Of a stretch of 64,000 nucleotides of DNA, positions 2,097 to 61,619 are shown in pieces. Positions within the stretch are counted from its first letter, which is position 1. Each line of letters opens with the position of its first letter. The stretch is from positions 186,001 to 250,000 of IMG/VR virus record IMGVR_UViG_3300020477_000990. One strand, written 5' to 3'. A model generated the notes under the pieces. That model worked only from the letters and a program-made list of their open reading frames with translations. It had not been told where the DNA came from and did not search any database. The position numbers and the translations under genes are program-made.

Positions 2097-5044
2097 TATT
2101 CTTCTCCAAATGATTCTAAAGTATTAGTATTATATATAAACGTTTCTCTAGGTCCTTTAATATTTTGTGTAAATTGACCACCTTCAAATCTACTAACAAT
2201 TTCTACTGCGGCATACACACCATTTAATAATCTTTCTTTATGTGTATCGCCTGGTGTTGCAATTCCAGTTTCTAAACTTGGTTCTCCAGCACTAGTACGT
2301 GCTGTAAATAGTAAATAATTTTCTCCAGCAAAGGTTGATACAGAGAATTCATCTGGATCATTTTCACTTTCTAACCAAAATATATCACCTCTAATTTCCA
2401 TATCCATTTGTACCATATCAGCTTGGAAGTCACTTAAAGTACCTTCCATTACCATATCAAATTGGTGTTTTCCTTTGTTTTTAGGATGTCCTTCACTATT
2501 ATATTTACCGCTCTCAGAACGATTAAGTCCCCACATTACTGTTACAGGACGATCCATACTTTCAATTTTATCAACTAATGATTGCTCATTTATTTTTTCT
2601 GCGTAAATTTGTTTAAAGTTTTCAGTTCCATCTACAGATACAGGAGTTTTTGCATCATCGTTCATTCTACCACGAACAATAACTTCTTTTTTATTTCCGA
2701 ACTCGTCTTCTACAACTTTAGTTCCACCATAAGTTGCTAACTGTCTATCTTCTTTTGTGTTTAAAGATTCAAGTGAGGTCGCCAATGCCTGGTCTGCTTC
2801 AAATGTACCATCTTTAATACCTGCAACAAATTGACTTACTAATTCTTTTCTTTCTTTTTCAAAATTACTTAATCCTGATTTCATTTCTTCTGTATTCTTT
2901 TTTTCTAATGAACTTGCTTTTGTTTTTAAATAACTTTTCCATGCTTCACGAACATTTTTTTGTTGTTCTCTAAAGTCATTAACTCTTATTGATGACTCTT
3001 TGATTTTTGTTTGTGCAGTATCATCTAACCCGGTAAATAAGTTTTGATAACTTTGTAGTGCCATGAAAAAATTATTATTATACTTAATATCAAATCTTAA
3101 AACTTTATCGTTTAACCCTGTAAATAGATAATCATATCTTTTCCTCATACATTTGTATGATGTAGTTTGACCTTCTTCACTACCAAAATTTTCATTTACT
3201 AGTGCTGTTATTTTCTTTTTTGCCCATTCTTCTGATTTATTAAATATTCCTTGTAAAATTTCTGGTCTGATAGTTGGAAACAATGATACTGTATAATGAT
3301 ATTCTCTAGCATAATCATTTCTTAATGAATCCCAAGCTATGTTAACAACGTCACATTTAATTTTAAAAATATATTTTATATGGTTTTTAACTTTATCTGA
3401 ATCATTTGAATCTGGATCTTCGTCATCAGGATTAAATCCTTTGGCTAAATTTTGCATTTTTTTTGAATGCGATAATCCAAATTCTAGTATTCTATCTAAA
3501 CTTGTATCTTGTGGAATAACAAATGATCTTAAAGTTGGATCCCATAACTCTTTATCCAATCCAGTACTTCTGTTTTCAGCAGTTGACTCTTTTTCTCCAT
3601 CAGTTGGAACAATATCATCATCGCCAATAAATTTTTTAGCTCCTGGACTTAAATGTATGTAATATTCATCTAATGTTTCTTTTTCAATTGCTAATTTATC
3701 AACTTCGTTAAGATTAATTGCTTCTGCTACTGAATCACATAAATTTTTAACTGTTCTAATATTGTTAAGTTGTAATGGTCTATCTGTAGTAAAGACGTGA
3801 TCGTATTTTCCTTGGTCACCTGCTCTAATACATTGTAAACTATATATTGCTCCTGATGTATCTACAGAAGTTTCTACAGCAATTATATTAATTAAAAATT
3901 GTCTTTCAGTATTTGGAATTGGTTTTACAATTTCTCCTGTATCTGGTTTACGTCCTATGAATTGGAGTTTCAATAAGTATGTTGCTTTTAAGCCATCTGG
4001 CATACCAAGTTTAACTGCACTATTAACTAAAATTGTTGTAAGTGATTCTCCTAATGGCTGAGCCATTGTAATCATAAAATCAACAGCCCCAGAAACTCTA
4101 TGAGCATTGCTAATTGGACCACCCACAGCATTAATTTGCACTCCTTGTATATTCATAACTGTAGAGGCTGTTTCTGCAATTGTAATAGGTTGTATAGTTG
4201 GACTCCATTTATTAAAAGATTTTCCACCTTCAACAATATATCTTTGAGCTCTAATGGCATCATCTTCATGAAGCATTTGTAGTTCAAAGTTATATGTTGG
4301 TCCATCATAATCTAAAAGTACATTTCTTTGAAAAAAGTGTGATAAATTTCTTTCAGCATCAGAAGTTACATTACCAGCTTTGTCTTTATAGTCGATATCA
4401 TCAAACCTTTGGAGAGCAACTGTTATATCTTTTTTAGTAAATTTTACAGCCGAACCTTCATGAGGATTTATAACAATTTTATCCTTTAGTACTGCTTTGT
4501 CTTCATTTGAAAACTTTTTTATTTTACCTTCTCCGGCATTTTCGTCACCTTCAAATAATCCTGGTTGTCTATCAGAAATTATTGATGCATTTGAATTTTT
4601 AATTATTTCTGCATGATCTCTATATGCTTTTGTATATATTGGATGTTGGAATGTTTTTTTCTCTTTACTTGCAACAGTATTATCAGTATTAGTAAGTGAA
4701 TTTTCTAAACTTCTTTTCCAACCAACATGAGCAAAACCTTTACCTGCGGCAGTATGATCACCTTTATAGTTGTTACCATGGGCTAATATTTCACTATGGT
4801 TAGTTTTTTTATTAGTAAGATCTTCGCCGCCAGTAACAATAGCTTCTGCAGATATACTATTTTTATGATTAGCTACCTCGGCAAATGCTCTAGGTTTATA
4901 AAATTTTCCATCTTTTATAAATCCACCTCTAGTTCGAACACCTCCCTCGATTTTACCCCAGTTTGGGTTTTCAGTCACAACCTCATCTTTCTTTTTATTT
5001 TTTTCTTTGTGTGCTGGATGTTTATTTTTTCCAAAGCCAACCAT
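2096..5044 (-). CDS. Large baseplate hub-like protein (gp27/VgrG-N-like)
   Basis: 982 aa; lies between LysM/wedge gene and spike; C-terminal 'YAAVEIVSRFEGGQFTQ' resembles hub proteins. Confidence 0.5.
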   Translation of the reverse strand: MVGFGKNKHPAHKEKNKKKDEVVTENPNWGKIEGGVRTRGGFIKDGKFYKPRAFAEVANHKNSISAEAIVTGGEDLTNKKTNHSEILAHGNNYKGDHTAAGKGFAHVGWKRSLENSLTNTDNTVASKEKKTFQHPIYTKAYRDHAEIIKNSNASIISDRQPGLFEGDENAGEGKIKKFSNEDKAVLKDKIVINPHEGSAVKFTKKDITVALQRFDDIDYKDKAGNVTSDAERNLSHFFQRNVLLDYDGPTYNFELQMLHEDDAIRAQRYIVEGGKSFNKWSPTIQPITIAETASTVMNIQGVQINAVGGPISNAHRVSGAVDFMITMAQPLGESLTTILVNSAVKLGMPDGLKATYLLKLQFIGRKPDTGEIVKPIPNTERQFLINIIAVETSVDTSGAIYSLQCIRAGDQGKYDHVFTTDRPLQLNNIRTVKNLCDSVAEAINLNEVDKLAIEKETLDEYYIHLSPGAKKFIGDDDIVPTDGEKESTAENRSTGLDKELWDPTLRSFVIPQDTSLDRILEFGLSHSKKMQNLAKGFNPDDEDPDSNDSDKVKNHIKYIFKIKCDVVNIAWDSLRNDYAREYHYTVSLFPTIRPEILQGIFNKSEEWAKKKITALVNENFGSEEGQTTSYKCMRKRYDYLFTGLNDKVLRFDIKYNNNFFMALQSYQNLFTGLDDTAQTKIKESSIRVNDFREQQKNVREAWKSYLKTKASSLEKKNTEEMKSGLSNFEKERKELVSQFVAGIKDGTFEADQALATSLESLNTKEDRQLATYGGTKVVEDEFGNKKEVIVRGRMNDDAKTPVSVDGTENFKQIYAEKINEQSLVDKIESMDRPVTVMWGLNRSESGKYNSEGHPKNKGKHQFDMVMEGTLSDFQADMVQMDMEIRGDIFWLESENDPDEFSVSTFAGENYLLFTARTSAGEPSLETGIATPGDTHKERLLNGVYAAVEIVSRFEGGQFTQNIKGPRETFIYNTNTLESFGEE

Positions 5045-5050
5045 AGTTAC

Positions 5051-5335
5051 CTACCTTATATTTTTTAATTTAGGAATTCTAATTACTATACCTGCTCTAA
5101 AATCTTGAATAGGATCAATTAATATGTTTTCATTTCTTACAGCAAATACCCACCAATAGTCTACAGTTCCATATTTATTGTTTGATAATAAATCTGGTCT
5201 TTTGTCATATTTTGATTCAATAACATAAGACTCATCTGACTCATCTTTAATAATATATTTTGGATCCATTATATCAAGGTAATCACCTTTAATTGATGTT
5301 TTACTATATGGACTTGTAGATTTATATGATGCCAT
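5051..5335 (-). CDS. Baseplate wedge LysM/gp53-like protein
   Basis: 'RPDLLS...YGTVDYWWVFAVRN...DF..G..IRIP' LysM/tail-X pattern. Confidence 0.75.
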   Translation of the reverse strand: MASYKSTSPYSKTSIKGDYLDIMDPKYIIKDESDESYVIESKYDKRPDLLSNNKYGTVDYWWVFAVRNENILIDPIQDFRAGIVIRIPKLKNIR

Positions 5336-6045
5336 TAATAAAATCCTTTATCTAATAATTTTCCTGTACGGAAATCTTCTAAATTAAATTCGTCTCTTAA
5401 TGCTGATGGATTAGGACTTACAACCAAATCAACAAACACATTAAGAATTAATGGTACATATGATTTTGATAGCATTTCTTGAAGTTGTGAAGTTTCGTTT
5501 CTTTGTTCTTGGATATTCATTCCTTCATAATCCATTGAAGAACCGCATGGAACATAATCAACATCTTGGTCTAAACCATAAGCAACTGATCTTATATATA
5601 CTGGTGTTCTATCAAACATTGCAGGACCATAAGCACTAAAGGCTAATTTTGGAGGTGGTGTACCTCTTTTTTGACGGTCTGCTTTATCTGATTCAACTCC
5701 ACCAAAAGCAGATTTTGACACCACTCTAAAAAAATGTAAAGCGGCCATCATATATGATGCTTCTTCTTCAGTATGAGCACCAAAAGTTCCTGTAACAGTC
5801 ATTGATGGTGATTGTGTTCTTGAGTATGCTAGATAATCATAGTTTGTGTGTGGTAGTTCATATTGTCCAAAACCAACGTTGGCGTGTTGTACTTGAATCA
5901 TTGGAGTATATGGAAACATTAATCCATTTGTTTTCCATAATGGTCTTATTAAATTACCTGGTTCATCTGGACCATAAATTAAGGCCTTATGTTCAGGTAA
6001 TTTACCCATTGCTTGAATTTTTGCTCTATAATCTGTACGTGCCAT
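5335..6045 (-). CDS. Tail tube initiator / baseplate gp48-gp54-like protein
   Basis: 'LMFPYTPMI...TNY.Y.AY...SP...VTGTF' tube-initiator pattern; directly upstream of LysM gene. Confidence 0.6.
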   Translation of the reverse strand: MARTDYRAKIQAMGKLPEHKALIYGPDEPGNLIRPLWKTNGLMFPYTPMIQVQHANVGFGQYELPHTNYDYLAYSRTQSPSMTVTGTFGAHTEEEASYMMAALHFFRVVSKSAFGGVESDKADRQKRGTPPPKLAFSAYGPAMFDRTPVYIRSVAYGLDQDVDYVPCGSSMDYEGMNIQEQRNETSQLQEMLSKSYVPLILNVFVDLVVSPNPSALRDEFNLEDFRTGKLLDKGFY

Positions 6046-6053
6046 TATAGTAT

Positions 6054-6059
6054 TATTTA
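6054..6059 (-). promoter_or_regulatory. Late promoter core TAAATA for baseplate operon
   Basis: TAAATA 8 nt upstream of ATG 6045; no SD. Confidence 0.6.
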
Positions 6060-6096
6060 TTGGAAAAATTAACTACACACATAATAAAAAACATTC

Positions 6097-6125
6097 TTGA
6101 CTTTTAGCCGTTAATATTATATTAT
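6097..6125 (+). promoter_or_regulatory. sigma70-like promoter for gp55-gp47-gp46
   Basis: TTGACT-17-TATTAT. Confidence 0.6.
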
Positions 6126-6149
6126 ATTATATAAATCAAAGGATATAGT

Positions 6150-6956
6150 GTGGCTAAAAGAGTAAATTACCTTAATAACAAAGATATGTTGGCTGAAATT
6201 CATAAGAGTAAAACCTCTTATTGCCATTATACAAAGCCAGAATATCAGCAATATGACATAATTTTACCAAGTATTTCAAAGATTAATAGGCTAACAATAT
6301 CACAAGCACGTAAGAACCATGCAGAAAGATTACTTCAAATTAAAGTAGATGAGCTTGGGCTAAAAAGATCACAATATGATGAATATAGAGTTGATCATAA
6401 AACAATACCTGTAACTTCTTTAATTTTTAGAGTAATGACATATGATCATATTCCAGATGAACCGGGGCGTAAATTAAATCCAAAAACTGTTGCTGACACA
6501 AAAGTTAAATTAAATTTTCCACCATTTAAACATTATAAGTTAAACAAAAATGGACAACCTTTTGAAGTAGGAAAAAGCCATTATAGAAATCATAATGAAT
6601 TTTGTTTAGATCATGGAAAAATTACACCAAAGTTAGCTACTATGTTTATTAAGTTATGCCATAGATATGGTACACGAGCTAACTGGCGAGGATATACGTA
6701 TAACGATGAAATGCAAGGACAAGCATTGTTACAATTATCACAAATTGGTTTACAATTTGATGAGTCAAAATCACAAAATCCATTTGCTTATTATACAGCA
6801 ACAATTACAAACTCATTTACAAGAGTTTTGAATATGGAAAAGAAAAATCAAAATTTAAGAGATGACTTGTTACAAGAGGCAGGAGTAATGCCATCCTTAA
6901 CAAGACAAATGCAAAACGAAGAAAAGCAGAAAGAACCACCCAAGGAAACTAAATGA
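6150..6956 (+). CDS. gp55: Late transcription sigma factor, T4 gp55-like
   Basis: N-terminal 'NYLNNKDML.EI' and 'NPFAYYT..I.NSF.R.LN.EKK'; upstream of gp47/gp46 as in T4-like phages. Confidence 0.8.
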   Translation: MAKRVNYLNNKDMLAEIHKSKTSYCHYTKPEYQQYDIILPSISKINRLTISQARKNHAERLLQIKVDELGLKRSQYDEYRVDHKTIPVTSLIFRVMTYDHIPDEPGRKLNPKTVADTKVKLNFPPFKHYKLNKNGQPFEVGKSHYRNHNEFCLDHGKITPKLATMFIKLCHRYGTRANWRGYTYNDEMQGQALLQLSQIGLQFDESKSQNPFAYYTATITNSFTRVLNMEKKNQNLRDDLLQEAGVMPSLTRQMQNEEKQKEPPKETK

Positions 6957-7963
6957 CGTTATTTAAAAAGGCGGCGTGTTTTACTGACATACACTTTGGT
7001 ATGAAAAACAATGCTAGGCAACATAACATAGATTGTGAAAATTTTGTCAAATGGTTTATAGAAGAAGCTAAAGAACGTGGATGCGAAACCTGTTTCTTTT
7101 TAGGCGATTGGCACCACCAAAGATCCGCAATTAATATTTCAACATTAAATTATTCAATATCAAATTTAAAAAGATTAAATGAATCTTTTGAAAAAGTTTA
7201 TTTTATTGTTGGTAATCATGATTTATTTTATAGAGATAAACGTGAGATATCTTCAGTAGTATTTGCTAATGAACTTGCAAATATTAAAGTAGTTGATGAA
7301 TGGATTGTTGAAGATGAAGTTGCTATTATACCATGGTTAGTAGGTGATGAATGGAAACAAATTAAAAAAATGAAATGTAAGTATATGTTTGGTCATTTTG
7401 AATTGCCACATTTTAAAATGAACGCAATGGTAGAGATGCCAGATATAGGAACAATACGAAGTGACCATTTTAAAAATGTTGGTCAAGTGTTTACAGGACA
7501 TTTTCATAAAAGACAACATTCAGGGAATATTTCTTATATTGGAAATCCTTTTCCTCATAACTTTGCAGATGTTTGGGATGATGACCGTGGAGCAATGTTT
7601 TTAGAATGGGACCAAAAACCAGAATATAGAATTTGGCCTGACGCACCTAGATATAGATCAATTAATTTAAGCAAGTTATTAGAAGACCCAGAAACAGTTT
7701 TAGAACCAAATTCTTATATAAGAGTAAAAGTAGATTTAGATATTTCATATGAAGAAGCAAATTTTATTAAAGAAAATTTTGCACAAAATTATGATATTAG
7801 AGATTTATCTTTAATACCGCAGAAAAAAGAAGAACACGCACAAGAAGTAGAAGGTGAGATTATATTTGAATCAGTTGATCAAATAGTAACAAATCAATTA
7901 TCAAAAATAGAATCTGATACTTTTGAAAATAATGTGCTAATTGAGATTTACAATAATTTATGA
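6953..7963 (+). CDS. gp47: Recombination endonuclease, Mre11/SbcD-like
   Basis: Phosphoesterase motifs DIHFG, GDWHH, GNHD, GHF, GHFH. Confidence 0.92.
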   Translation: MTLFKKAACFTDIHFGMKNNARQHNIDCENFVKWFIEEAKERGCETCFFLGDWHHQRSAINISTLNYSISNLKRLNESFEKVYFIVGNHDLFYRDKREISSVVFANELANIKVVDEWIVEDEVAIIPWLVGDEWKQIKKMKCKYMFGHFELPHFKMNAMVEMPDIGTIRSDHFKNVGQVFTGHFHKRQHSGNISYIGNPFPHNFADVWDDDRGAMFLEWDQKPEYRIWPDAPRYRSINLSKLLEDPETVLEPNSYIRVKVDLDISYEEANFIKENFAQNYDIRDLSLIPQKKEEHAQEVEGEIIFESVDQIVTNQLSKIESDTFENNVLIEIYNNL

Positions 7964-9792
7964 TTAAATTACAAAACATAACTATTAAAAATTTTATGAG
8001 TGTAGGTAATACTACTCAAGCAGTTAATTTTTCCCATGATGGACTTACACTAGTTCTTGGTAATAATTTAGACTTGGGTGGTGAAGGTTCTAGAAATGGT
8101 ACTGGAAAAACTACACTTATAAATGCTCTAAGCTATGCAATATATGGACAAGCACTTACAAATATTCGTAAGGACAATCTTGTTAATAAAACTAACAATA
8201 AAAACATGATTGTTACTGTGGATTTTGAAAAGGATGGTCACAAGTATAGATTAGAGAGAGGACGTAAGCCTAATAAATTCCAATTCATTGTTGACGATGC
8301 CGTTGTAAACGAGCAAGGTACAGATGAAGCACAAGGAGAAAATAGACTTACGCAAGATGAGGTGTTGAGGGTATTTGACATGAGCCACACCATGTTTAAA
8401 CATATTGTTGCCCTCAACACTTACACCGAACCATTTTTAGCAATGAAATCAAATGACCAACGTTCTATTATTGAAGAATTGTTAGGTATATTAAGGTTAA
8501 GTGAAAAAGCAGAAGTATTAAAAGAAAGAATTCGAGAAGTTAATGATGATATAAAAACTGAACAAGCACGATTAGAACAAATTAAAATATCAAATGAAAA
8601 AATTGAAGATACTATTAGAAAGTTTCATATTAAAAGTATTGCTTGGGAAGAGTCACATAAAAAAGCAATTACAGAACTTACTAATGGTATTATAGAATTA
8701 GAAAAAATAGATATTAATAGTGAAATTGAAAAACATAAATTACTAACATTATGGCAAGAACAATCTCAAAAAATTAAATCATATACACAAAATCTAAACT
8801 TTAATAAAAGTAATATAGTTGCTGTACAGAAGCAAATAGACTCTTTAAACACACAATTAAACACACTTGATGGTAAGCAATGCCCTATGTGTGAACAAGA
8901 ATTGCATACAGAGAAGCATACGCACTTGGTTGATGACGTTAAGGTACAACATACTGCTAAACTTGAAGAAGAAACACAAATACAATCAACAATAGAGTCA
9001 ATTGAAAAGCAAATTGCTGAACAAGGAGATATTGGTGAAAGGCCGGAAACAGCATACAGTTCAGCTGATGAGGCATATCAACATAGGCAAAATCTTGCAG
9101 AGTTAAAAACACAATTAGAAACAGAACAGCAAAAAGAAAATCCTCATACAGAACAAATTAATACTTTAAAAACTAAAAATATAGAAGAAGTTGATTATGC
9201 ACAAATTAATTCTTTAACAAAACTAAAAGATCATCAAGACTTTTTATATAAATTATTAACATCAAAAGATTCATTTATACGTAAAAAAATTATTGATCAA
9301 AACTTATTATATTTGAATTCAAGATTAAATTATTATTTGGATAAAATTGGTTTGCCTCATGAGGTTGTGTTTAAATCAGATTTATCTGTAGAAATTACTG
9401 AACTAGGACGAGAGTTAGACTTTGATAACTTATCTAGAGGTGAACGTAATAGACTTATACTTGGTTTAAGTTGGGCATTTAGAGATGTGTATGAATCAAT
9501 GAATACTACTGTAAACTTATTGTTTATTGACGAACTTGTAGATTCTGGTATGGATACAATGGGTGTAGAGTCAGCAATGTCGGTATTGAAAAAAATGTCT
9601 AGAGAACGTAGTAAAAATGTTTTCTTAATTTCACACAGAGATGAGCTAACATCTAGATGTTCTAATGTATTAAATGTTGTTAAAGAAAATGGATTTACAT
9701 CATTTGCTACAGACATTGAAACTGTAAGTCATAAATCACATCCTGATTTGTTTAAGGAAAAAGCAAATGAGCACGATACAGTTAGCACCTAA
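7960..9792 (+). CDS. gp46: Recombination ATPase, Rad50/SbcC-like
   Basis: Walker A NGTGKTT, coiled coil with CPMC zinc hook, LSRGE signature, LFIDE Walker B. Confidence 0.93.
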   Translation: MIKLQNITIKNFMSVGNTTQAVNFSHDGLTLVLGNNLDLGGEGSRNGTGKTTLINALSYAIYGQALTNIRKDNLVNKTNNKNMIVTVDFEKDGHKYRLERGRKPNKFQFIVDDAVVNEQGTDEAQGENRLTQDEVLRVFDMSHTMFKHIVALNTYTEPFLAMKSNDQRSIIEELLGILRLSEKAEVLKERIREVNDDIKTEQARLEQIKISNEKIEDTIRKFHIKSIAWEESHKKAITELTNGIIELEKIDINSEIEKHKLLTLWQEQSQKIKSYTQNLNFNKSNIVAVQKQIDSLNTQLNTLDGKQCPMCEQELHTEKHTHLVDDVKVQHTAKLEEETQIQSTIESIEKQIAEQGDIGERPETAYSSADEAYQHRQNLAELKTQLETEQQKENPHTEQINTLKTKNIEEVDYAQINSLTKLKDHQDFLYKLLTSKDSFIRKKIIDQNLLYLNSRLNYYLDKIGLPHEVVFKSDLSVEITELGRELDFDNLSRGERNRLILGLSWAFRDVYESMNTTVNLLFIDELVDSGMDTMGVESAMSVLKKMSRERSKNVFLISHRDELTSRCSNVLNVVKENGFTSFATDIETVSHKSHPDLFKEKANEHDTVST

Positions 9793-55518: not shown

Positions 55519-55547
55519 ATTATACTTGCTTTAATTTTATTTAGCAA
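55519..55547 (-). promoter_or_regulatory. sigma70-like promoter, leaderless
   Basis: TTGCTA-17-TATAAT-6-ATG. Confidence 0.7.
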
Positions 55548-55581
55548 CATAAATATACATATAATTTGAAGGAAATTTACT

Positions 55582-56373
55582 ATGTCAATAAATGTATATG
55601 TATATAATAATACCCATACAGTTATAGTAAATACAAGTACAAATCAAGGTAGTGTAACTATGTACGATAAAACTATAAAACTATATCAAGGTATTGATAA
55701 TACAGTAAAGTTTGAGTTAAAAGATAATGACAGAGCACCTGTTAATTTAACCAATATGACTGTAACTATGAATATTCTTGATACTAAAAGCAACGAAACA
55801 TCAATCACACGAGCTTTAGAAATAACAAACGCAACTTCAGGGTTAGCATCATTGAATTTAACTAGTGCTGATTTAGACAATTTAGCTTCTGGATTTTATA
55901 ATTATAGTCTATATACTACAGATGCTAATAGTGAACAACAAATAGTATATACAGACTTAAATCAAGCGGCAAAAGGTACAGTTGAAATTATTGAAGGTGT
56001 AGTACCAAATCCAGCAACAACATTTACAATGGAATGGAATCCTGGTACAAATGATGGAACTTGGTATTATTCAAATGCAGTTTCAGGAGCATCAGAACGT
56101 AATTTAACATCAAGTAATCATACTATTGCAGTTTATACATCATCATTTGATGGTAAATTTAAAATGCAAGGTTGTTTGGCAGACACGGCTAGTACTGTTA
56201 ATACTGATTGGTTTGATATTCCATTAACAACTGGAACAACTGAAGTAACATTAACTAATTCAGATTCACTTGCACCATATAGATTTATAAGTCAAGCACG
56301 TTGGATTAGATCAGCATATGATCCAGATGCCGGTAACGCAGGAACTTTTACTAAAGTACTAATGAGGAACTAA
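55582..56373 (+). CDS. Virion structural protein (BppU-N-like Ig-type fold)
   Basis: 'LYQGIDNTVKF...D.D..PVNLT', 'G.A.L.LT..DL....G.Y.Y'; T/N-rich; TAAATA upstream. Confidence 0.55.
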   Translation: MSINVYVYNNTHTVIVNTSTNQGSVTMYDKTIKLYQGIDNTVKFELKDNDRAPVNLTNMTVTMNILDTKSNETSITRALEITNATSGLASLNLTSADLDNLASGFYNYSLYTTDANSEQQIVYTDLNQAAKGTVEIIEGVVPNPATTFTMEWNPGTNDGTWYYSNAVSGASERNLTSSNHTIAVYTSSFDGKFKMQGCLADTASTVNTDWFDIPLTTGTTEVTLTNSDSLAPYRFISQARWIRSAYDPDAGNAGTFTKVLMRN

Positions 56374-56375
56374 GA

Positions 56376-57533
56376 ATGGTTAATAGACCATTTTTAAAAA
56401 TAGAAGAAATCAAAAGAGCTGATTTTGAAAGAGTTATTCATGCGACTCAAGAAGATTCAAATTTCAGTTGCTATATTGCAATTCATACTTTAAAAAATGG
56501 TCCAGCTTTTGGCGGCATAAGATTTTGGAAGTATAAAGATTCACAAACACCATATAAAGATGTTTTAAATTTATCAAGAGCAATGACAACTAAATGTGCA
56601 ATTGCTGGAATACAGTTAAGTGGTGGAAAAACAGTTATTGAAGGAGTAGTTCATAGAGAAACAGGTAATCTTGGTGTTGAACCAAAACGAATATTAGGTT
56701 GGTTAGGCGACGCAATTAATTATTTAAAAGGTGATTATTATGCAGGGCTAGATGTTGGCTTTGATTTTGATATGTTAACAAAACTAAGATTACATACAGA
56801 ATATACTGCAACATATTCTGATCCAAATGTTGGTAGTTCATGTACTGCTTATAGTGTTTATAATTCTATGAAAGCCGCTGTTGAATATAAACTTGGTAAG
56901 CAATCACTTGAAGGTGTTAAAGTAGGTATTAAAGGTTTAGGAAAAGTTGGTTTTCAGTTAGCAAATTATTTGTGTGATGATGGTGCTAAATTATATTTTT
57001 CAGAAGTAGATCAAGATAAATTTAATCAGTTTAAAAATGAATCATTACCACCTAGGTGGGTATATAAAGTTGTACCAACATATAATTTGCATAGAGAAGA
57101 TCTTGATGTTTATTCTCCATGTGCATTAGGTAATGATATAAAATTGCATATGGCTGAAGAAATGAATTGTAAAATTATTTGTGGAGCCGCAAATAATCAA
57201 ATTGATTTATCTGAACCAGATAGAACAATAGAAGCATTAACTAAAAAAGATATATTATATATACCAGATAATTTGGCCAATGTTGGCGGGGTATTTAGAT
57301 CTGCTGGAACAATATTAAAATCAAGAGATGAAGAAGAATCATTTAAATTAATAGGAACATCATATCCAAGAACATTGCATATATTAAAAATAGCAGAAAA
57401 TTATAAAGTTACACCTAATGAAATTTGTAAAGAAATGGGTCTAGCGGCATCAGGAGAAGGTCAAAATAGGTTTAAACTTAATGTTGGTGGCCTTGGTGAT
57501 GTTTTTGAAGGCAATAATACCTATAATTATTAA
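56376..57533 (+). CDS. Glu/Leu/Phe/Val dehydrogenase (leucine dehydrogenase-like)
   Basis: 'GPAFGGIR', 'MTTK...AG...GGKTV', 'DVG', GLGKVG, 'SPCALG', 'GAANNQ', 'N.GG'. Confidence 0.9.
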   Translation: MVNRPFLKIEEIKRADFERVIHATQEDSNFSCYIAIHTLKNGPAFGGIRFWKYKDSQTPYKDVLNLSRAMTTKCAIAGIQLSGGKTVIEGVVHRETGNLGVEPKRILGWLGDAINYLKGDYYAGLDVGFDFDMLTKLRLHTEYTATYSDPNVGSSCTAYSVYNSMKAAVEYKLGKQSLEGVKVGIKGLGKVGFQLANYLCDDGAKLYFSEVDQDKFNQFKNESLPPRWVYKVVPTYNLHREDLDVYSPCALGNDIKLHMAEEMNCKIICGAANNQIDLSEPDRTIEALTKKDILYIPDNLANVGGVFRSAGTILKSRDEEESFKLIGTSYPRTLHILKIAENYKVTPNEICKEMGLAASGEGQNRFKLNVGGLGDVFEGNNTYNY

Positions 57534-57562
57534 TTGACTTTTTGTTAATTTTCTTATATTAT
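57534..57562 (+). promoter_or_regulatory. sigma70-like promoter, leaderless
   Basis: TTGACT-17-TATTAT-6-ATG 57569. Confidence 0.7.
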
Positions 57563-57568
57563 ATAAGC

Positions 57569-58558
57569 ATGAATCTTCAAACAACAATATTAACACATTT
57601 ACGTGGAAAAAGAAAAATGACTCCAAGTGGGTGGACAACGGTTAATTGTCCAATGTGTGTGACTAACGGGCAACCAAGGCCAGACACTAGATCACGAGGA
57701 GGCTTCAGTTTTGTTGATGGAATGGTTTACCATTGCTTCAATTGTGGATTCAGTACTAGTTTTAAATCAGGTAGATTATTTGGTAAGAAACTAGTAGGAC
57801 TATTGCGTGGAATTGGTATACCTGATAATGAAGTTAAAAAACTTCAATTGTTAGCAATACGTGAAAAAGAAACTTTCACGCAAGAAGTCCATAAAGAAAA
57901 ACCAAAGGTATCGTGGAGAGAAATACAGTTACCAAAAGGATCTAAACCTTTAATCGAGATTATTAAAAATGATAATCCACCAGATGATGCTGTGTGGGTA
58001 TACAAGCACATTATTGATAGAGGTTTAGATCATTATGGTGATTTTTATTGGAGCAATGATACATATTTAGATTTGAACAGAAGGTTTATCGTACCGTTTT
58101 ATTATCAAGGTAGTACAGTTGGTTATACATCAAGAATTATTGATAATAATCCAGATAAGCCAAAATATTTTACAAATTCACAACCAAATTATATGTATAA
58201 TTTAGATGTATTAAGTAAAAAAAGAAAATATTTAATTGTTGTAGAAGGTGTACTAGATGCTTTAAGTATTGATGGATTAGCAGTATTACATAATAAACTA
58301 AACCAACAGCAAATAGATATTATAAATGAATTTGAAGGTGAAATTATAGTTTGTCCTGATAGAGATAGAGCAGGAACAACATTAATTGATCAAGCAGTTG
58401 AAAATAATTGGGCTGTCAGTTTTCCGCCATGGCATAAAAAAATAAAAGATTGTGCTGATGCTGTAAAAAATTATGGTCAATTGTTTACTATAAAAAGCAT
58501 CATAGAAAATCGAGTAAATAATAAAGTAAAGATTAATGTATTGAGAAAGATCGCATAG
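57569..58558 (+). CDS. DNA primase (gp61/DnaG-like)
   Basis: CPMC...HCFNC zinc domain; TOPRIM 'VVEGVLDAL', 'PDRDRAG'; start moved to 57569. Confidence 0.9.
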   Translation: MNLQTTILTHLRGKRKMTPSGWTTVNCPMCVTNGQPRPDTRSRGGFSFVDGMVYHCFNCGFSTSFKSGRLFGKKLVGLLRGIGIPDNEVKKLQLLAIREKETFTQEVHKEKPKVSWREIQLPKGSKPLIEIIKNDNPPDDAVWVYKHIIDRGLDHYGDFYWSNDTYLDLNRRFIVPFYYQGSTVGYTSRIIDNNPDKPKYFTNSQPNYMYNLDVLSKKRKYLIVVEGVLDALSIDGLAVLHNKLNQQQIDIINEFEGEIIVCPDRDRAGTTLIDQAVENNWAVSFPPWHKKIKDCADAVKNYGQLFTIKSIIENRVNNKVKINVLRKIA

Positions 58559-58571
58559 GAGAATAAAAAGA

Positions 58572-59183
58572 ATGGCGGATTTAGATAGAAAGAAAAAAGA
58601 AGATAAAGCAAGAGGGCCGACCCCATCTCCACAACCATTACAACCAGGAGTAATGATGTGGGAAGCTGGAATAATGTATTTTAGTGAACCATTTGATGCT
58701 AAAACAACGCAACCAGTTATTAACACAATTATCGAAAAGAACTTATTGCCAAATTCACAAAGACCAAATGAACTTACGTTAGTAATTAATTCACCAGGTG
58801 GGCAAGTTCATTCAGCATTTGCTTTAATTGACACGATGAAAGGATCAGCTATTCCTGTAAAAACTGTAGGATTAGGTATGATAGCATCATGTGGATTATT
58901 AACATTTATGAGTGGAACAAAAGGACGTAGAGTGTTAACACCAAATACATCTATATTATCACATCAATATAGTTGGGGATCAGGCGGAAAAGAACACGAA
59001 TTATTTGCAAGAGTACGAGAATTTGAATTAAGCACAAAAAGAATGATTGAACATTACAAAAAATGTACAGGATTATCTGAAAAGAAAATTAGAGAGATAT
59101 TATTACCACCAGAGGACGTTTGGTTATCAGCCAAAGAAGCAGTCAAATATGGTATAGCAGATAAAATTGTAAAAACTTATTAA
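58572..59183 (+). CDS. clpP: ClpP-like serine protease
   Basis: 'INSPGG', 'IASCG' (Ser), 'SHQ' (His), 'EDVWLSA.EAV.YG..D' (Asp). Confidence 0.85.
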   Translation: MADLDRKKKEDKARGPTPSPQPLQPGVMMWEAGIMYFSEPFDAKTTQPVINTIIEKNLLPNSQRPNELTLVINSPGGQVHSAFALIDTMKGSAIPVKTVGLGMIASCGLLTFMSGTKGRRVLTPNTSILSHQYSWGSGGKEHELFARVREFELSTKRMIEHYKKCTGLSEKKIREILLPPEDVWLSAKEAVKYGIADKIVKTY

Positions 59184-59365
59184 TGAGTCCAAGAGAAAAA
59201 ATATTAATAGTAATTTTTTTATTTGTATTAGGAATATCAAACTTGTTTTTAGCTTATCAGATAATTGATTTGCAGGTTACTGTAACTGAATTGTTTGAAA
59301 TGGTTTATAAGCATGATGCTTTTTTACGAATGATAGAAATGTTTAGTCCAGGAATGGAAATTTAA
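59183..59365 (+). CDS. Small single-pass membrane protein
   Basis: N-terminal hydrophobic helix; coupled to both neighbours. Confidence 0.55.
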   Translation: MSPREKILIVIFLFVLGISNLFLAYQIIDLQVTVTELFEMVYKHDAFLRMIEMFSPGMEI

Positions 59366-60012
59366 TGATTGTAGAATTAATAGATAAAATGGGATCTGAT
59401 CTAACGGTAGTAAATGCCGCTAGAGTTAGTTATGGTAAAAACAAAGAAGTATTTGATGCATCAGATGAAAAACTTATTAAGTTTTTAGCTTTGCATAATC
59501 ATTGGTCTCCATTTGCTCATTGTAGCCTACAATTTAGAATTAAAGCACCAATATTTGTTGCTAGGCAGTTAGTTAAGCATCAAGTAGGATTAAGTTGGAA
59601 TGAAATTAGTAGACGCTATGTTGATTTCCCACCTGAATTATATAGCCCAAAAGAATGGAGAGGCAGACCAAAAAATTCTAAACAAGGATCAGATGGCACA
59701 GTTGAATTTAATAAAAATGAACAACATATACTTGATACAACTATGGAACAATGTTTATTAATTTATAATAATATGATAGCAAAAGGTGTAGCACCAGAGC
59801 AGGCTAGAATGGTATTACCACAATCAATGATAACAGAATGGTATTGGACAGGAAGTTTATATGCGTTTGCTAGAGTTTGTGATTTAAGATGTGCAAGTGA
59901 TACACAAGAAGAAACTAGAATAATAGCAAATTCAATTGATAAATTTTGCAATGAGGAATTTCCATATAGTTGGAAATATTTAAGACTTGTAAAACAACAG
60001 GAAAGTGTGTAA
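59365..60012 (+). CDS. thyX: Flavin-dependent thymidylate synthase
   Basis: 'VNAARVSY', 'HWSPF', 'RQLVKH....NEISRRY', 'EQARMVLP', 'TQ.E.R'. Confidence 0.95.
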   Translation: MIVELIDKMGSDLTVVNAARVSYGKNKEVFDASDEKLIKFLALHNHWSPFAHCSLQFRIKAPIFVARQLVKHQVGLSWNEISRRYVDFPPELYSPKEWRGRPKNSKQGSDGTVEFNKNEQHILDTTMEQCLLIYNNMIAKGVAPEQARMVLPQSMITEWYWTGSLYAFARVCDLRCASDTQEETRIIANSIDKFCNEEFPYSWKYLRLVKQQESV

Positions 60013-60021
60013 TATATAACT

Positions 60022-60189
60022 ATGGGTATGGATATTAAAAGAGAATATAGTGCTGATAAACCAGAAGATATAAAAGCAAAAGAAGATGCAAAGAAAAAAA
60101 TGTGGAAAGAGTTTTTTGCAAAAGGTGGAAAAATTGAAAAGATTCCATATAAGGTAACAAAAGATCAATTGAAAAAAGGACAACTGTAA
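60022..60189 (+). CDS. 55-aa protein with SutA RNAP-binding-like motif (not in ORF track)
   Basis: MGMDIKREY...EFFAKGGKIEKIPY; TAATG overlap with helicase; TTGTAA-17-TAATAT-6-ATG. Confidence 0.65.
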   Translation: MGMDIKREYSADKPEDIKAKEDAKKKMWKEFFAKGGKIEKIPYKVTKDQLKKGQL

Positions 60190-61619
60190 TGGCCGCATCT
60201 GACTATAAAAATTATGATGAAAGTTTACAAAAACTTTTTATAGAGTTTTGTGCAACTGATCCTGAGTTATTTGTAAGAGTAAAAAATATAGTTAGGAAAG
60301 AATATTTTTCAGGAAAATTATCTAATGCAGTTAAGTTTATGTTAGAGCATACTGAACAATATAATGCATTACCAACAACTGAACAAATTAAAGCAACCTG
60401 TGATGTAGAATTAACAAAAGTTGAAATAACTGAACAACATAAAAATTGGTTCTTTGATGAGTTTGAAACATTTTGTAGGCACAAGGCATTAGAACACGCA
60501 ATTATAAGTTCAGCTGATTTATTAGAAAAAGGCGATTATGGTCAAGTAGAAGAAAAAATAAAACACGCAGTAAGAATTGGACTTACAAAAGATTTAGGTA
60601 CAGATTACTTTGTTGATCCAAAAGCAAGATTGTTAGCACTTAAAGATAATAATGGCACAATTAGTACAGGATGGACAGCATTAGATCAAAAATTATATGG
60701 TGGATTTAATAAAGGTGAATTGAATATATTTGCAGGACAAAGTGGTGCAGGTAAAAGTTTATTTTTACAAAATCTTGCATTAAATTGGGTAACTTCTGGA
60801 ATGAATGTAGTTTACTTTACTTTTGAGTTAAGTGAAAATTTAAGTTCGATGAGAATTGATTCGATGTCAACAGGTGTAGCATCAAATGAAATATTTAAAA
60901 AGATTGATGATATTGATTTAATGGTACGTATGCAAGGACAAAAAGCAGGTAAGTTTCAATTAAAGTACATGAATAGTGGATGTACAGTAAATGATTTAAG
61001 ATCATATATAAAAGAATATGAAGTACAAACAAATGCAAGACCAGATTGTATTTGTGTTGATTATTTAGATTTGTTAATGCCAATTAGTAAGAGAGTTTCA
61101 CCAAGTGATTTATATATTAAAGACAAATATGTATCTGAAGAATTACGTAATTTAGCAGTAGAAAATCAAATTGTATTAGCAACAGCATCACAATTAAATA
61201 GGTCATCAGTAGAAGAAATTGAATATGATCATTCACATATAGCTGGTGGGTTAAGTAAGGTTCAAACAGCTGATAATGTTATAGGGATTCAAACTAGTAG
61301 AGCTATGCGTGAACGTGGTAGATATTTAATACAATTAATGAAAACTAGGTCAAGTGGTGGTATTGGAAATAAAATATCATTATCATTTAATATAGATACC
61401 TTAAGAATTACTGATCTAACTGAAGAGCAAATAGCAGAAGATGATAATATGACGTCATCATCAATAACTAGTTCTATTAAGAAGCGAACTGCTACAATTA
61501 AGCCAAAAACACCACAAAATCAAGGAGCTCAAGTAGTTCAACAAGTAGAACAAGTAGCAAATTTACGTAGTATGCTTAAGACTAGAAGAACTGCATTAGA
61601 TGACACAGACAAGTTATAA
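60189..61619 (+). CDS. gp41: Replicative DnaB-like helicase
   Basis: GQSGAGKS, 'FTFELSE', 'VDYLDL', 'TASQLNRS', 'QLMKTR'. Confidence 0.93.
   Translation: MAASDYKNYDESLQKLFIEFCATDPELFVRVKNIVRKEYFSGKLSNAVKFMLEHTEQYNALPTTEQIKATCDVELTKVEITEQHKNWFFDEFETFCRHKALEHAIISSADLLEKGDYGQVEEKIKHAVRIGLTKDLGTDYFVDPKARLLALKDNNGTISTGWTALDQKLYGGFNKGELNIFAGQSGAGKSLFLQNLALNWVTSGMNVVYFTFELSENLSSMRIDSMSTGVASNEIFKKIDDIDLMVRMQGQKAGKFQLKYMNSGCTVNDLRSYIKEYEVQTNARPDCICVDYLDLLMPISKRVSPSDLYIKDKYVSEELRNLAVENQIVLATASQLNRSSVEEIEYDHSHIAGGLSKVQTADNVIGIQTSRAMRERGRYLIQLMKTRSSGGIGNKISLSFNIDTLRITDLTEEQIAEDDNMTSSSITSSIKKRTATIKPKTPQNQGAQVVQQVEQVANLRSMLKTRRTALDDTDKL

What the first reader, a model, noticed from the sequence alone, without database searches (positions are those of the whole stretch)
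56376..57533. Leucine-type amino acid dehydrogenase coupled to a late structural gene
Seen: an intact ELFV dehydrogenase (both active-site Lys in MTTK and GGK, the DVG Asp, and the GxGxxG NAD site) starting 2 nt after a virion-type gene whose upstream region has TAAATA (55550). Established: LeuDH interconverts branched-chain amino acids and keto acids with NH4+/NADH. I am not aware of it as a common phage auxiliary gene (not verified). Inference: late redirection of nitrogen/redox or branched-chain keto-acid supply, or a structural moonlighting role.
Basis: partly seen in the sequence, partly recalled or inferred. Interest (0 to 1): 0.6.

Follow-up and report, generated by a model that had tools for sequence, protein, structure and literature searches.

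The report
Divergent amino-acid dehydrogenase in jumbo phage
A 328-kb marine jumbo phage carries an intact, selected amino-acid dehydrogenase with an unusual substrate pocket, placed directly behind a virion-protein gene with a late-type promoter; the only close cellular copies are in a few tiny-genome marine bacteria.

Summary
Window 56376-57533 (+) encodes an intact 385-aa dehydrogenase of the Glu/Leu/Phe/Val (ELFV) family. All catalytic residues and an NAD-type Rossmann motif are present.

It belongs to the short LeuDH/PheDH/TrpDH branch but is not a canonical leucine dehydrogenase. The four specificity positions (LeuDH L40/A113/V291/V294) read F/G/V/S. Together with L114, F292 and R293, this signature is invariant in all 28 clade members examined and was found in no other homologue.

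The clade is isolated: its own cluster representative scores 483 bits and the next best of 1.84 billion representatives scores 181.

The gene sits at the same position, between a virion-protein gene and the primase, in all 10 informative relatives. It is under purifying selection (dN/dS 0.09-0.17).

A conserved late-type promoter precedes the virion gene. A conserved sigma70-type promoter follows the dehydrogenase stop. This supports co-transcription with the virion gene, but timing is untested.

The only close cellular homologues are single-gene insertions in about 1.1-Mb, low-GC marine Gammaproteobacteria. They nest inside the phage clade, which suggests phage-to-host transfer (AU test borderline).

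Substrate and physiological role remain inferred.

The parts
55538..55555 (+). Conserved block TATTTAGCAACATAAATA. It ends in the late-promoter-like octamer CATAAATA (55548-55555), 26 nt before the ATG at 55582.
   Evidence: Identical in clade A and clade B relatives while the flanks differ. (N)ATAAATA lies 19-45 nt upstream of the portal, baseplate hub, tail tube, head-tail adaptor and virion protein genes. A gp55-type late sigma factor is present.
55582..56373 (+). Virion-protein gene (263 aa), homologue of Pseudomonas phage PA5oct gp262.
   Evidence: BLASTP 29% identity over 255 aa, E 7e-32. gp262 is annotated as a structural protein by ESI-MS/MS. PHROG hits to a virion structural protein and a tail fibre assembly family. 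Weak BppU_N hits in relatives.
56364..56369 (+). Shine-Dalgarno-like GAGGAA inside the end of the virion gene, 6 nt before the dehydrogenase ATG.
   Evidence: Read directly from the sequence. AGGAA and a 1-2 nt gene gap are kept in all relatives.
56376..57533 (+). ELFV-family amino-acid dehydrogenase, 385 aa (P0001).
   Evidence: AlphaFold2 model: pLDDT 86.7, pTM 0.87. Foldseek best matches LeuDH, PheDH and TrpDH, TM 0.71-0.89. dN/dS 0.09-0.17.
56508..56516 (+). Codons for F45-G46-G47 (LeuDH L40-G41-G42). F45 is a changed specificity position.
56592..56630 (+). From the codon of K73 (LeuDH K68, substrate carboxylate binding) to the codon of K85 (LeuDH K80, general base).
   Evidence: Alignment to 6acf. 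Invariant. Roles as cited in PMC2723916.
56745..56753 (+). Codons for G124-L125-D126 (LeuDH A113-E114-D115). The catalytic Asp is kept; two pocket positions are changed.
56934..57005 (+). Rossmann motif G187-L-G189-K-V-G192, through to the acidic residue E210 (LeuDH D203), which suggests NAD+ rather than NADP+.
   Evidence: The cofactor inference rests on general knowledge of Rossmann folds.
57291..57302 (+). Codons for V306-F307-R308-S309 (LeuDH V291-I292-N293-V294), part of the clade-specific pocket signature.
   Evidence: Invariant in 28 of 28 clade members. Absent from 62 other homologues, 57 other viral ELFV loci and 149 representative clusters.
57486..57530 (+). Phage-specific C-terminal tail (residues 371-385, ending in the G-N-N-T-Y motif), predicted disordered.
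   Evidence: pLDDT below 50. Conserved in phage clades A and B but truncated at different codons in the bacterial copies. Unique within the phage proteome.
57534..57562 (+). Conserved sigma70-type promoter, TTGACT-17 nt-TATTAT, immediately after the dehydrogenase stop codon.
   Evidence: Scan hit with 10 of 12 matches. Conserved in both clades, with TATAAT in the relatives. An RNA-library contig begins at about 57567.
57569..58558 (+). DNA primase (329 aa from the ATG at 57569; the TTG at 57542 is probably not the start).
   Evidence: Toprim and PHROG primase hits. Relatives are called at 329 aa. 81-91% identical in relatives.
58572..59183 (+). ClpP-family protease (context).
   Evidence: Pfam CLP_protease, E 2.8e-33.
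59365..60012 (+). ThyX-type thymidylate synthase (context).
   Evidence: PHROG thymidylate synthase, E 3.6e-69. Thy1 in relatives.
60189..61619 (+). DnaB-like replicative helicase (context).
6150..6956 (+). gp55-type sigma factor for late transcription, which would read the late-type promoter.
   Evidence: phrog_12791 E 2.9e-81 and phrog_234 E 7.7e-23. Weak match to T4 gp55, E 8.7e-5.

Best explanation
The gene encodes a catalytically competent, probably NAD+-dependent L-amino-acid dehydrogenase of the short LeuDH/PheDH/TrpDH branch of the ELFV family. It forms its own subfamily with a remodelled side-chain pocket, so its preferred substrate is probably not the canonical leucine/valine/isoleucine set. 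A hydrophobic or weakly polar amino acid is my guess.

It is a fixed auxiliary metabolic gene of a cosmopolitan lineage of marine jumbo phages distantly related to PA5oct. It is most likely transcribed from the conserved T4-type late promoter in front of the preceding virion-protein gene, and translated from its own ribosome-binding site.

The proposed role is oxidative deamination of amino acids in the infected cell. This would yield NADH, 2-oxo acids and ammonium while phage DNA and virions are made, in a host lineage that often has no enzyme of this family.

Shown: the fold, the catalytic residues, purifying selection, conserved synteny, and conserved promoter-like elements.
Inferred: cofactor, substrate class, direction of the reaction, expression timing, and host identity.
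For: Enzyme integrity and selection:
- Intact ORF with both Pfam domains.
- Best solved relatives are TrpDH 5b37 (1.4e-45), LeuDH 6acf (4e-44) and PheDH (1e-31); GluDH reaches only 1e-9.
- Confident model whose fold matches LeuDH, PheDH and TrpDH.
- G46, G47, M70, K73, K85, D126, N273 and N274 are invariant.
- An acidic residue (E210, or D in relatives) sits at the LeuDH D203 position.
- dN/dS is 0.09-0.17 between moderately diverged pairs.

Distinct pocket:
- The signature F/G/L/V/F/R/S is invariant in 28 of 28 clade members and absent elsewhere.
- The specificity role of positions 40, 113, 291 and 294 is summarised in PMC2723916.

Fixed phage gene:
- Same position in every relative examined.
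- 10 of 10 informative IMG/VR contigs with a primase at least 81% identical carry it.

Transcription architecture:
- Conserved late-type promoter block upstream of the virion gene, and a conserved sigma70-like promoter after the dehydrogenase stop.
- No conserved internal sigma70-like site.
- Late sigma factor present.
- The same motif precedes the portal, baseplate, tail tube and adaptor genes.
- RNA-library contigs cover 56326-56554, which bridges the gene junction, and 56842-57007.

Host side:
- The candidate host lineage has no other ELFV enzyme in the 5 genomes searched.
Against: - No activity, substrate or cofactor data exist. The pocket differs from every characterised class, so even 'amino acid' as the substrate class is extrapolated from the conserved alpha-carboxylate and alpha-amino chemistry residues.
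- The RNA evidence comes from contigs of two libraries of one study. It cannot show strand, transcript ends or timing, and DNA carry-over is possible.
- The gene sits in a replication and nucleotide module just upstream of the primase, so early or middle read-through transcription is not excluded.
- The phage has no glutamine synthetase, asparagine synthase or NAPRTase family gene that would tie it to a nitrogen or NAD pathway.
- The gene evolves about twice as fast as its replication neighbours: 58% against 84% identity between clades.
- The host is not identified experimentally.
Confidence: 0.55

Rival explanations
1. It is an ordinary leucine (branched-chain) dehydrogenase. It would supply branched-chain 2-oxo acids, NADH and ammonium.
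For: LeuDH structures are the top Foldseek matches. JGI annotates clade members as leucine dehydrogenase. V291 is kept and the pocket is mainly hydrophobic.
Against: Three of the four LeuDH specificity positions differ (L40F, A113G, V294S), and E114L, I292F and N293R differ as well. All are invariant in the clade. TrpDH is as close as LeuDH. The clade sits on a branch of about 2.1 substitutions per site, away from all LeuDH-like sequences.
Confidence: 0.2
2. It works mainly in the reductive direction. It would fix ammonium onto a 2-oxo acid to make a particular amino acid needed in bulk for virion proteins.
For: ELFV reactions are reversible (established knowledge). The gene shares a late-type unit with a virion gene. 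The candidate hosts lack any ELFV enzyme.
Against: An NAD-type acidic residue (E210 or D) is more typical of catabolic enzymes (general knowledge). A ClpP protease gene lies nearby, which fits amino-acid release rather than shortage. There is no direct evidence either way.
Confidence: 0.15
3. It acts on a non-standard substrate, as ScyB does in a pigment pathway. The substrate could be an amino-acid-like intermediate of a phage-specific pathway, such as nucleotide or DNA modification or a cofactor. This would explain why ELFV genes sit beside replication genes in several jumbo phages.
For: The pocket is unique and invariant. The best NCBIfam hit is ScyB, at 204 bits against a cut-off of 600. 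Other ELFV genes lie next to the family-B DNA polymerase or to IMPDH/GMP-reductase-like genes in related contigs.
Against: No partner enzymes are conserved next to the gene. The bacterial copies sit as lone insertions next to arginine-biosynthesis genes. All residues that hold the alpha-carboxylate and alpha-amino group are standard.
Confidence: 0.08
4. It has a structural or virion-associated (moonlighting) role. The phage-specific disordered C-terminal tail would dock it to the particle or to another phage protein.
For: Tight coupling to a virion gene and a late-type promoter. A conserved phage-only C-terminal tail is lost in the bacterial copies.
Against: The full catalytic set is under purifying selection. 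PA5oct, whose virion proteome is known, has no such gene. There is no structural-protein similarity.
Confidence: 0.05
5. It is a host insert or an assembly chimera, not a phage gene.
For: Close cellular homologues exist at 51-70% identity.
Against: The same junctions appear in independent assemblies from JGI, ENA, Tara, Logan and IMG/VR. GC content is the same as the rest of the phage. DNA contigs from 11 studies hold the stretch.
Confidence: 0.01

Closest known systems
Leucine dehydrogenase (EC 1.4.1.9), e.g. Geobacillus stearothermophilus 6acf and Lysinibacillus sphaericus 1leh
   Same: Two-domain ELFV fold of about 360 aa. K68, K80, D115, G41, G42, M65, N261 and N262 are kept. GxGxxG motif with an acidic residue. 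V291 is kept. Foldseek TM 0.75-0.83.
   Different: About 30% identity. L40F, A113G, E114L, I292F, N293R and V294S. An extra beta-hairpin at about residues 91-100. A disordered C-terminal tail.
Phenylalanine dehydrogenase (Rhodococcus 1bw9/1c1d) and tryptophan dehydrogenase ScyB (Nostoc 5b37)
   Same: Gly at position 113, as in enzymes for aromatic substrates. Similar E-values and TM-scores to LeuDH.
   Different: ScyB model scores 204 bits against a cut-off of 600. Position 291 is not changed as it is in PheDH. Ser at 294 and Phe at 40 are not PheDH or TrpDH features.
Glutamate dehydrogenase
   Same: Ser at the position of GluDH S380 (LeuDH 294); GGV-x-x-S spacing.
   Different: The partner Lys (GluDH K89, LeuDH position 40) is Phe. 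Sequence similarity is only 1e-9. The long GluDH-type N-terminal part is absent.
Auxiliary metabolic genes of marine phages (general concept)
   Same: A metabolic enzyme with cellular homologues that is fixed in a phage lineage, under purifying selection, and found in marine metagenomes and RNA libraries.
   Different: No report of an ELFV dehydrogenase as a phage auxiliary gene was found in the held library. The tree suggests the cellular copies derive from the phage, not the reverse.
Pseudomonas phage PA5oct (Arenbergviridae), gp263-gp262-gp261-gp260 region
   Same: Same gene order: small minus-strand gene, virion protein, primase, DnaB. DnaB is 56% identical.
   Different: PA5oct has no dehydrogenase between gp262 and the primase, and no ClpP or ThyX between the primase and DnaB.

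Membership tests
ELFV (Glu/Leu/Phe/Val) amino-acid dehydrogenase superfamily | Both Pfam domains (PF02812 and PF00208) score above the gathering thresholds. | tested here: met
   51.4 and 57.6 bits against cut-offs of 25.3 and 23.4.
ELFV (Glu/Leu/Phe/Val) amino-acid dehydrogenase superfamily | Two-domain fold with an active-site cleft. | tested here: met
   AlphaFold2 pLDDT 86.7. Foldseek probability 1.00 to LeuDH, PheDH, TrpDH and GluDH.
ELFV (Glu/Leu/Phe/Val) amino-acid dehydrogenase superfamily | Catalytic and alpha-group binding residues (LeuDH K68, K80, D115, G41, G42, N262). | tested here: met
   K73, K85, D126, G46, G47 and N274 are present and invariant.
ELFV (Glu/Leu/Phe/Val) amino-acid dehydrogenase superfamily | NAD(P)-dependent oxidative deamination activity. 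| not testable with these tools
   Needs an enzyme assay.
Leucine dehydrogenase (EC 1.4.1.9) | Specificity pocket L40 / A113 / V291 / V294. | tested here: not met
   F45 / G124 / V306 / S309. The roles of these positions are as summarised in PMC2723916.
Leucine dehydrogenase (EC 1.4.1.9) | Groups with characterised LeuDH sequences rather than with other specificities. | tested here: inconclusive
   TrpDH 1.4e-45, LeuDH 4e-44. The clade sits on a stem of about 2.1 substitutions per site. No characterised reference sequences were included in the tree.
Tryptophan dehydrogenase ScyB (NF035922) | Score above the equivalog cut-off. | tested here: not met
   204.2 bits against 600.
Glutamate dehydrogenase | The Lys/Ser pair that binds the gamma-carboxylate (GluDH K89 and S380). 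| tested here: not met
   Ser is present (S309) but the Lys position is Phe (F45).
Phage auxiliary metabolic gene | A metabolic gene that is stably part of a phage genome, not contamination. | tested here: met
   The record has direct terminal repeats and is rated 100% complete. Identical synteny in independent assemblies; 10 of 10 relatives carry it.
Phage auxiliary metabolic gene | Expressed during infection and changes host metabolism. | tested here: inconclusive
   Present in contigs of two metatranscriptome libraries. Timing and effect were not testable.
T4-type late transcription unit | A gp55-type late sigma factor is encoded by the phage. | tested here: met
   Window 6150-6956: phrog_12791 E 2.9e-81; T4 gp55 E 8.7e-5.
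T4-type late transcription unit | A TATAAATA-type -10 element at the right distance, shared with structural genes. | tested here: met
   CATAAATA (7 of 8 matches) lies 26 nt before the ATG and is conserved across clades. 12 of 29 TATAAATA and 25 of 73 [ACG]ATAAATA sites lie 8-40 nt upstream of ORFs, where about 2% is expected. The ORFs include portal, baseplate hub, tail tube and adaptor.
T4-type late transcription unit | The transcript appears late and depends on replication. | not testable with these tools
   Needs a cultured phage-host pair.

The most novel reading that the evidence does not exclude
This is an amino-acid dehydrogenase that evolved within viruses and has a substrate specificity not yet described. 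It has been inherited for a long time in the late operon of a cosmopolitan marine jumbo-phage lineage. It was later donated to some strains of the phage's streamlined gammaproteobacterial host, which otherwise lack any enzyme of this family. There it lost its phage-specific C-terminal tail.
Probability: 0.3. Interest if true: 0.7.

Novelty: new variant of a known kind. Interest (0 to 1): 0.55.

Why it matters
If the enzyme is active, it adds amino-acid deamination (or amination) to the known ways marine phages rewire host metabolism. The phages concerned are large and widespread, and their likely hosts have minimal genomes with no enzyme of this class.

The invariant pocket is unlike that of any characterised ELFV enzyme. 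This makes it a natural candidate for a new substrate specificity, which is also of interest for biocatalysis, where LeuDH and PheDH scaffolds are engineered.

The nested phylogeny and the clean presence/absence site in the bacteria offer a testable case of a metabolic gene moving from virus to host.

Tried and rejected
- Near-identical DNA search of the phage collection found nothing.
- The sigma70-like promoter scan of the region as a whole was no better than shuffles: 34 hits against 33 expected. Only the site at 57534-57562 gained weight, through its conservation. Only one terminator-like site was found, inside the dehydrogenase gene, which is not above chance.
- No conserved internal sigma70-like promoter lies upstream of the dehydrogenase.
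- Family searches of the phage genome for NAPRTase, glutamine synthetase and asparagine synthase found nothing, so no nitrogen or NAD pathway partner can be named.
- Literature searches for leucine or amino-acid dehydrogenase as a phage auxiliary gene found nothing relevant (one query was malformed). The marine jumbo-phage survey PMC9123017 does not mention dehydrogenases. The PA5oct omics paper gave no timing for gp262 or the primase with the terms tried.
- The AU test of 'all phage copies form one clade, bacteria outside' gave p = 0.054. Host-to-phage transfer is disfavoured but not rejected.
- The order of the bacterial carriers could not be named, because the tools withhold group names for these genomes.
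- Pseudomonas phage Y12, one of the two deposited phage records with an ELFV hit, is marked UNVERIFIED and has no annotation, so it was not used.
- An RNA contig joint from 56014 to 59192 has only 21 letters on one side and was taken to be an assembly chimera.
- No complex prediction was run, because no binding claim is made.
- No genetic code other than table 11 was used.
Full report
**What is there**

The window is G000:C1:186001-250000 of a 328,149-bp virus record with direct terminal repeats, rated complete. GC content is about 32%.

The ORF at 56376-57533 (+) is open and encodes 385 aa. It hits both ELFV Pfam domains above their curated thresholds.

Among solved structures, the best sequence matches are:
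- tryptophan dehydrogenase 5b37 (1.4e-45);
- leucine dehydrogenases 8gxd, 6acf and 1leh (4e-45 to 3e-40);
- phenylalanine dehydrogenase (about 1e-31).

Glutamate dehydrogenases reach only 1e-9. The only strong NCBIfam hit is ScyB tryptophan dehydrogenase, at 204 bits, far below its 600-bit cut-off.

An AlphaFold2 model built on 61 sequences is confident (pLDDT 86.7, pTM 0.87). It superposes on LeuDH, PheDH and TrpDH with TM-scores of 0.71-0.89.

**Residues**

The alignment to 6acf has the same numbering as the classical Bacillus enzyme. The catalytic and alpha-group residues are all present:
- G46 and G47 (LeuDH G41, G42);
- M70 (M65);
- K73 (K68);
- K85 (K80);
- D126 (D115);
- N273 and N274 (N261, N262);
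- GLGKVG at 187-192.

They are invariant across the clade. E210, or Asp in relatives, aligns with LeuDH D203 at the end of the second Rossmann strand. By general knowledge this points to NAD+ rather than NADP+.

The specificity pocket is not that of LeuDH. The four positions known to set specificity are 40, 113, 291 and 294. Positions 113 and 291 change in PheDH; positions 40 and 294 are Lys and Ser in GluDH (PMC2723916). Here they read F, G, V and S. In addition E114 is L, I292 is F and N293 is R.

This seven-residue signature is invariant in all 28 clade members examined. It occurs in none of:
- 62 other homologues;
- 57 other viral ELFV loci;
- the 149 next-best representative clusters.

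The protein also has an extra beta-hairpin at about residues 91-100 and a disordered 15-residue C-terminal tail.

**How isolated the clade is**

The word-based search found three tiers:
- 76-97% identity: close kin of this phage;
- 55-59% identity: 383-aa proteins, many from Tara samples;
- 51% identity: 366-368-aa proteins.

Everything else is at or below about 41% identity.

I ran the exhaustive search over 1.84 billion representatives because this claim rests on the absence of relatives. It gave the clade's own representative at 483 bits and the next hit at 181 bits. In trees the clade sits on a stem of about 2.1 substitutions per site with full support.

**It is a phage gene, and a fixed one**

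The 55-59% tier lies on related jumbo-phage contigs of up to 285,939 bp. These have the same gene order:
1. UvsW-like helicase, followed by several small genes;
2. a 123-aa gene on the minus strand;
3. the virion-protein gene;
4. the dehydrogenase;
5. primase;
6. ClpP;
7. glutaredoxin (clade B);
8. ThyX;
9. DnaB.

Closer kin show the same order.

All 10 IMG/VR contigs that have a primase at least 81% identical, and that extend upstream of it, carry the dehydrogenase there. The stretch is present in DNA runs from 11 studies of marine samples.

PA5oct is the nearest cultured relative by DnaB (56% identity). It has the order gp263 (minus strand), gp262 virion protein, primase, DnaB, with no dehydrogenase. 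No PA5oct-like record matched the protein. The gene therefore sits at a position that is empty in PA5oct.

dN/dS is 0.09-0.17 for pairs with unsaturated dS. The gene does evolve faster than its neighbours. Between the two phage clades it is 58% identical, against 84-87% for the helicase, primase, ClpP and DnaB. Within clade A it is 76-80% identical, against 90-91% for the primase.

**Coupling to the virion gene**

The upstream ORF, 55582-56373, is a full-length homologue of PA5oct gp262 (E 7e-32). gp262 is annotated as a virion protein by mass spectrometry.

Its stop codon is 2 nt before the dehydrogenase ATG, and a GAGGAA ribosome-binding site lies inside its end. This junction is kept in all relatives.

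The 69-nt divergent intergenic region upstream contains the block TATTTAGCAACATAAATA. It is identical in both phage clades, while the flanks have diverged.

The evidence that this is a late promoter is as follows:
- Genome-wide, 12 of 29 TATAAATA sites and 25 of 73 [ACG]ATAAATA sites lie 8-40 nt upstream of an ORF start. About 2% would be expected by position alone.
- The ORFs concerned include the portal, baseplate hub, tail tube, head-tail adaptor and virion proteins.
- The phage encodes a gp55-type late sigma factor.

Directly after the dehydrogenase stop lies a conserved sigma70-type promoter, TTGACT-17 nt-TATTAT (TATAAT in relatives). It ends 6 nt before the primase ATG at 57569. No conserved sigma70-like site lies between the late-type promoter and the dehydrogenase.

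The simplest reading is one late unit (virion gene plus dehydrogenase) followed by a separately promoted replication unit.

Contigs from two metatranscriptome libraries of one study cover 56326-56554, which spans the junction, and 56842-57007. The primase region is covered much more deeply, and its contig starts at about 57567. Contigs cannot show strand, ends or timing, and DNA carry-over is possible, so this is consistent with the reading but does not prove it.

**Cellular relatives and direction of transfer**

The 51% tier is bacterial. The gene lies between a PF06181 membrane-protein gene and an argD-like aminotransferase gene followed by OTCase, amid valS, tsaE, phoU and pstCAB.

In the species-level genome collection it was first found in two genomes of about 1.1-1.2 Mb: SAG AH-287-I11, labelled 'uncultured Thiothrix sp.', and MAG LRMED-300. 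In all, 4 of the 53 species genomes of their order carry it.

Four related genomes have the same flanking genes directly adjacent, with an empty site. The five genomes searched have no other ELFV enzyme above threshold. These genomes may be incomplete.

Their local GC content (26-31%) resembles that of the phage.

In quick and careful trees the bacterial copies form one clade nested inside phage clade B. None of 200 bootstrap trees recovered clade B as monophyletic. Forcing all phage copies into one clade costs 10.65 log-likelihood units, with AU p = 0.054. That is borderline, and the grouping was named after the tree had been seen.

The bacterial proteins end inside the region that forms the phage C-terminal tail, with stop codons at different positions in different lineages. 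This fits decay of a phage-specific tail.

Together, the nested topology, the patchy single-gene insertion in bacteria, the fixation in phages and the tail erosion favour phage-to-bacterium transfer. They also point to this gammaproteobacterial lineage as the likely host. Neither conclusion is proven.

**Wider context**

A profile-based scan of IMG/VR found 68 loci with ELFV dehydrogenases. Eleven belong to this clade.

Many of the others (29-35% identity, with more canonical pockets) lie on contigs of 112-342 kb that share numerous genes with this phage. In several of these the ELFV gene sits immediately upstream of the family-B DNA polymerase. In others it lies beside IMPDH/GMP-reductase-like, cytidylyltransferase and peroxiredoxin genes.

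The phage's own genome has a second, degenerate ELFV-like ORF that lacks the catalytic residues.

Enzymes of this family are thus a recurring accessory of marine jumbo phages, although they are almost absent from deposited phage genomes and from BFVD. I found no paper describing them as phage auxiliary genes in the held library.

**Most likely mechanism**

- Shown: an intact, selected ELFV enzyme with a unique pocket, fixed at one locus, downstream of a conserved late-type promoter and a virion gene.
- Inferred: it uses NAD+; it deaminates a hydrophobic or weakly polar amino acid other than the canonical LeuDH set; it is made late; it supplies NADH, 2-oxo acids and ammonium in a host lineage that often lacks such an enzyme.

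A ClpP protease two genes downstream fits a picture of amino-acid release and use, but that link is speculation.

The rivals are a canonical LeuDH, a biosynthetic direction, a non-amino-acid substrate, a virion-associated role through the C-terminal tail, and an artefact. They are listed separately with what would refute each.

**Verdict**

- Observation: confirmed.
- Interpretation: partly supported.
- Novelty: a new variant of a known enzyme kind in an unusual carrier.
- Interest: moderate, rising if a new substrate specificity or virus-to-host transfer is confirmed.

Noticed in passing
L003:1489-2559 (G000:C1:2109-3179, outside the window): The same phage genome has a second ELFV-like ORF (356 aa, 24% identity). 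It lacks G41, G42, M65, K80 (Ser), D115 (Glu), N261 and N262 but keeps GxGxxG. It follows a SAM-methyltransferase gene that has TATAAATA upstream. It is probably not an amino-acid dehydrogenase any more.
   Followed up: partly
window 6150-6956 (+): A gp55-type sigma factor for late transcription (phrog_12791, E 2.9e-81).
   Followed up: yes
window 57534-57571 (+): A conserved sigma70-type promoter whose -10 element ends only 6 nt before the primase ATG. This implies a very short or absent leader. An RNA-library contig starts at about 57567. The TTG at 57542 listed as the ORF start is probably not used.
   Followed up: partly
L125, L132, L137, L144 (about 5000-8800); L122, L155: Related marine jumbo-phage contigs (112-342 kb) carry different ELFV dehydrogenases (29-35% identity, more canonical pockets). 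They sit directly upstream of the family-B DNA polymerase, or beside IMPDH/GMP-reductase-like, cytidylyltransferase and peroxiredoxin genes.
   Followed up: partly
L018, L019, L014 against L193-L196: In marine Gammaproteobacteria of about 1.1 Mb, the dehydrogenase is a single-gene presence/absence polymorphism between a PF06181 gene and an argD-like gene. No other ELFV enzyme was found in the five genomes searched.
   Followed up: yes
window 57486-57530; L018, L019 and L014 just past the gene's stop codon: The phage-only C-terminal tail ends in G-N-N-T-Y and is predicted disordered. The bacterial copies stop inside this region at different codons, as if the tail were decaying. Its function is unknown.
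   Followed up: partly
window 13313, 13340, 15735, 17507, 44854: TATAAATA is under-represented in the window (5 sites against about 15 expected), yet 4 of the 5 sites sit just upstream of gene starts (baseplate hub, portal and the next gene).
   Followed up: yes
window 58572-60012: ClpP protease, a 60-aa ORF and ThyX are inserted between the primase and DnaB, relative to PA5oct. Clade-B relatives also have a glutaredoxin there.
   Followed up: partly
window 55582-57533 against L106: The virion gene and the dehydrogenase are both about 58% identical between the two phage clades, while the flanking replication genes are 84-87% identical. This means either faster evolution or exchange of this two-gene unit.
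   Followed up: partly
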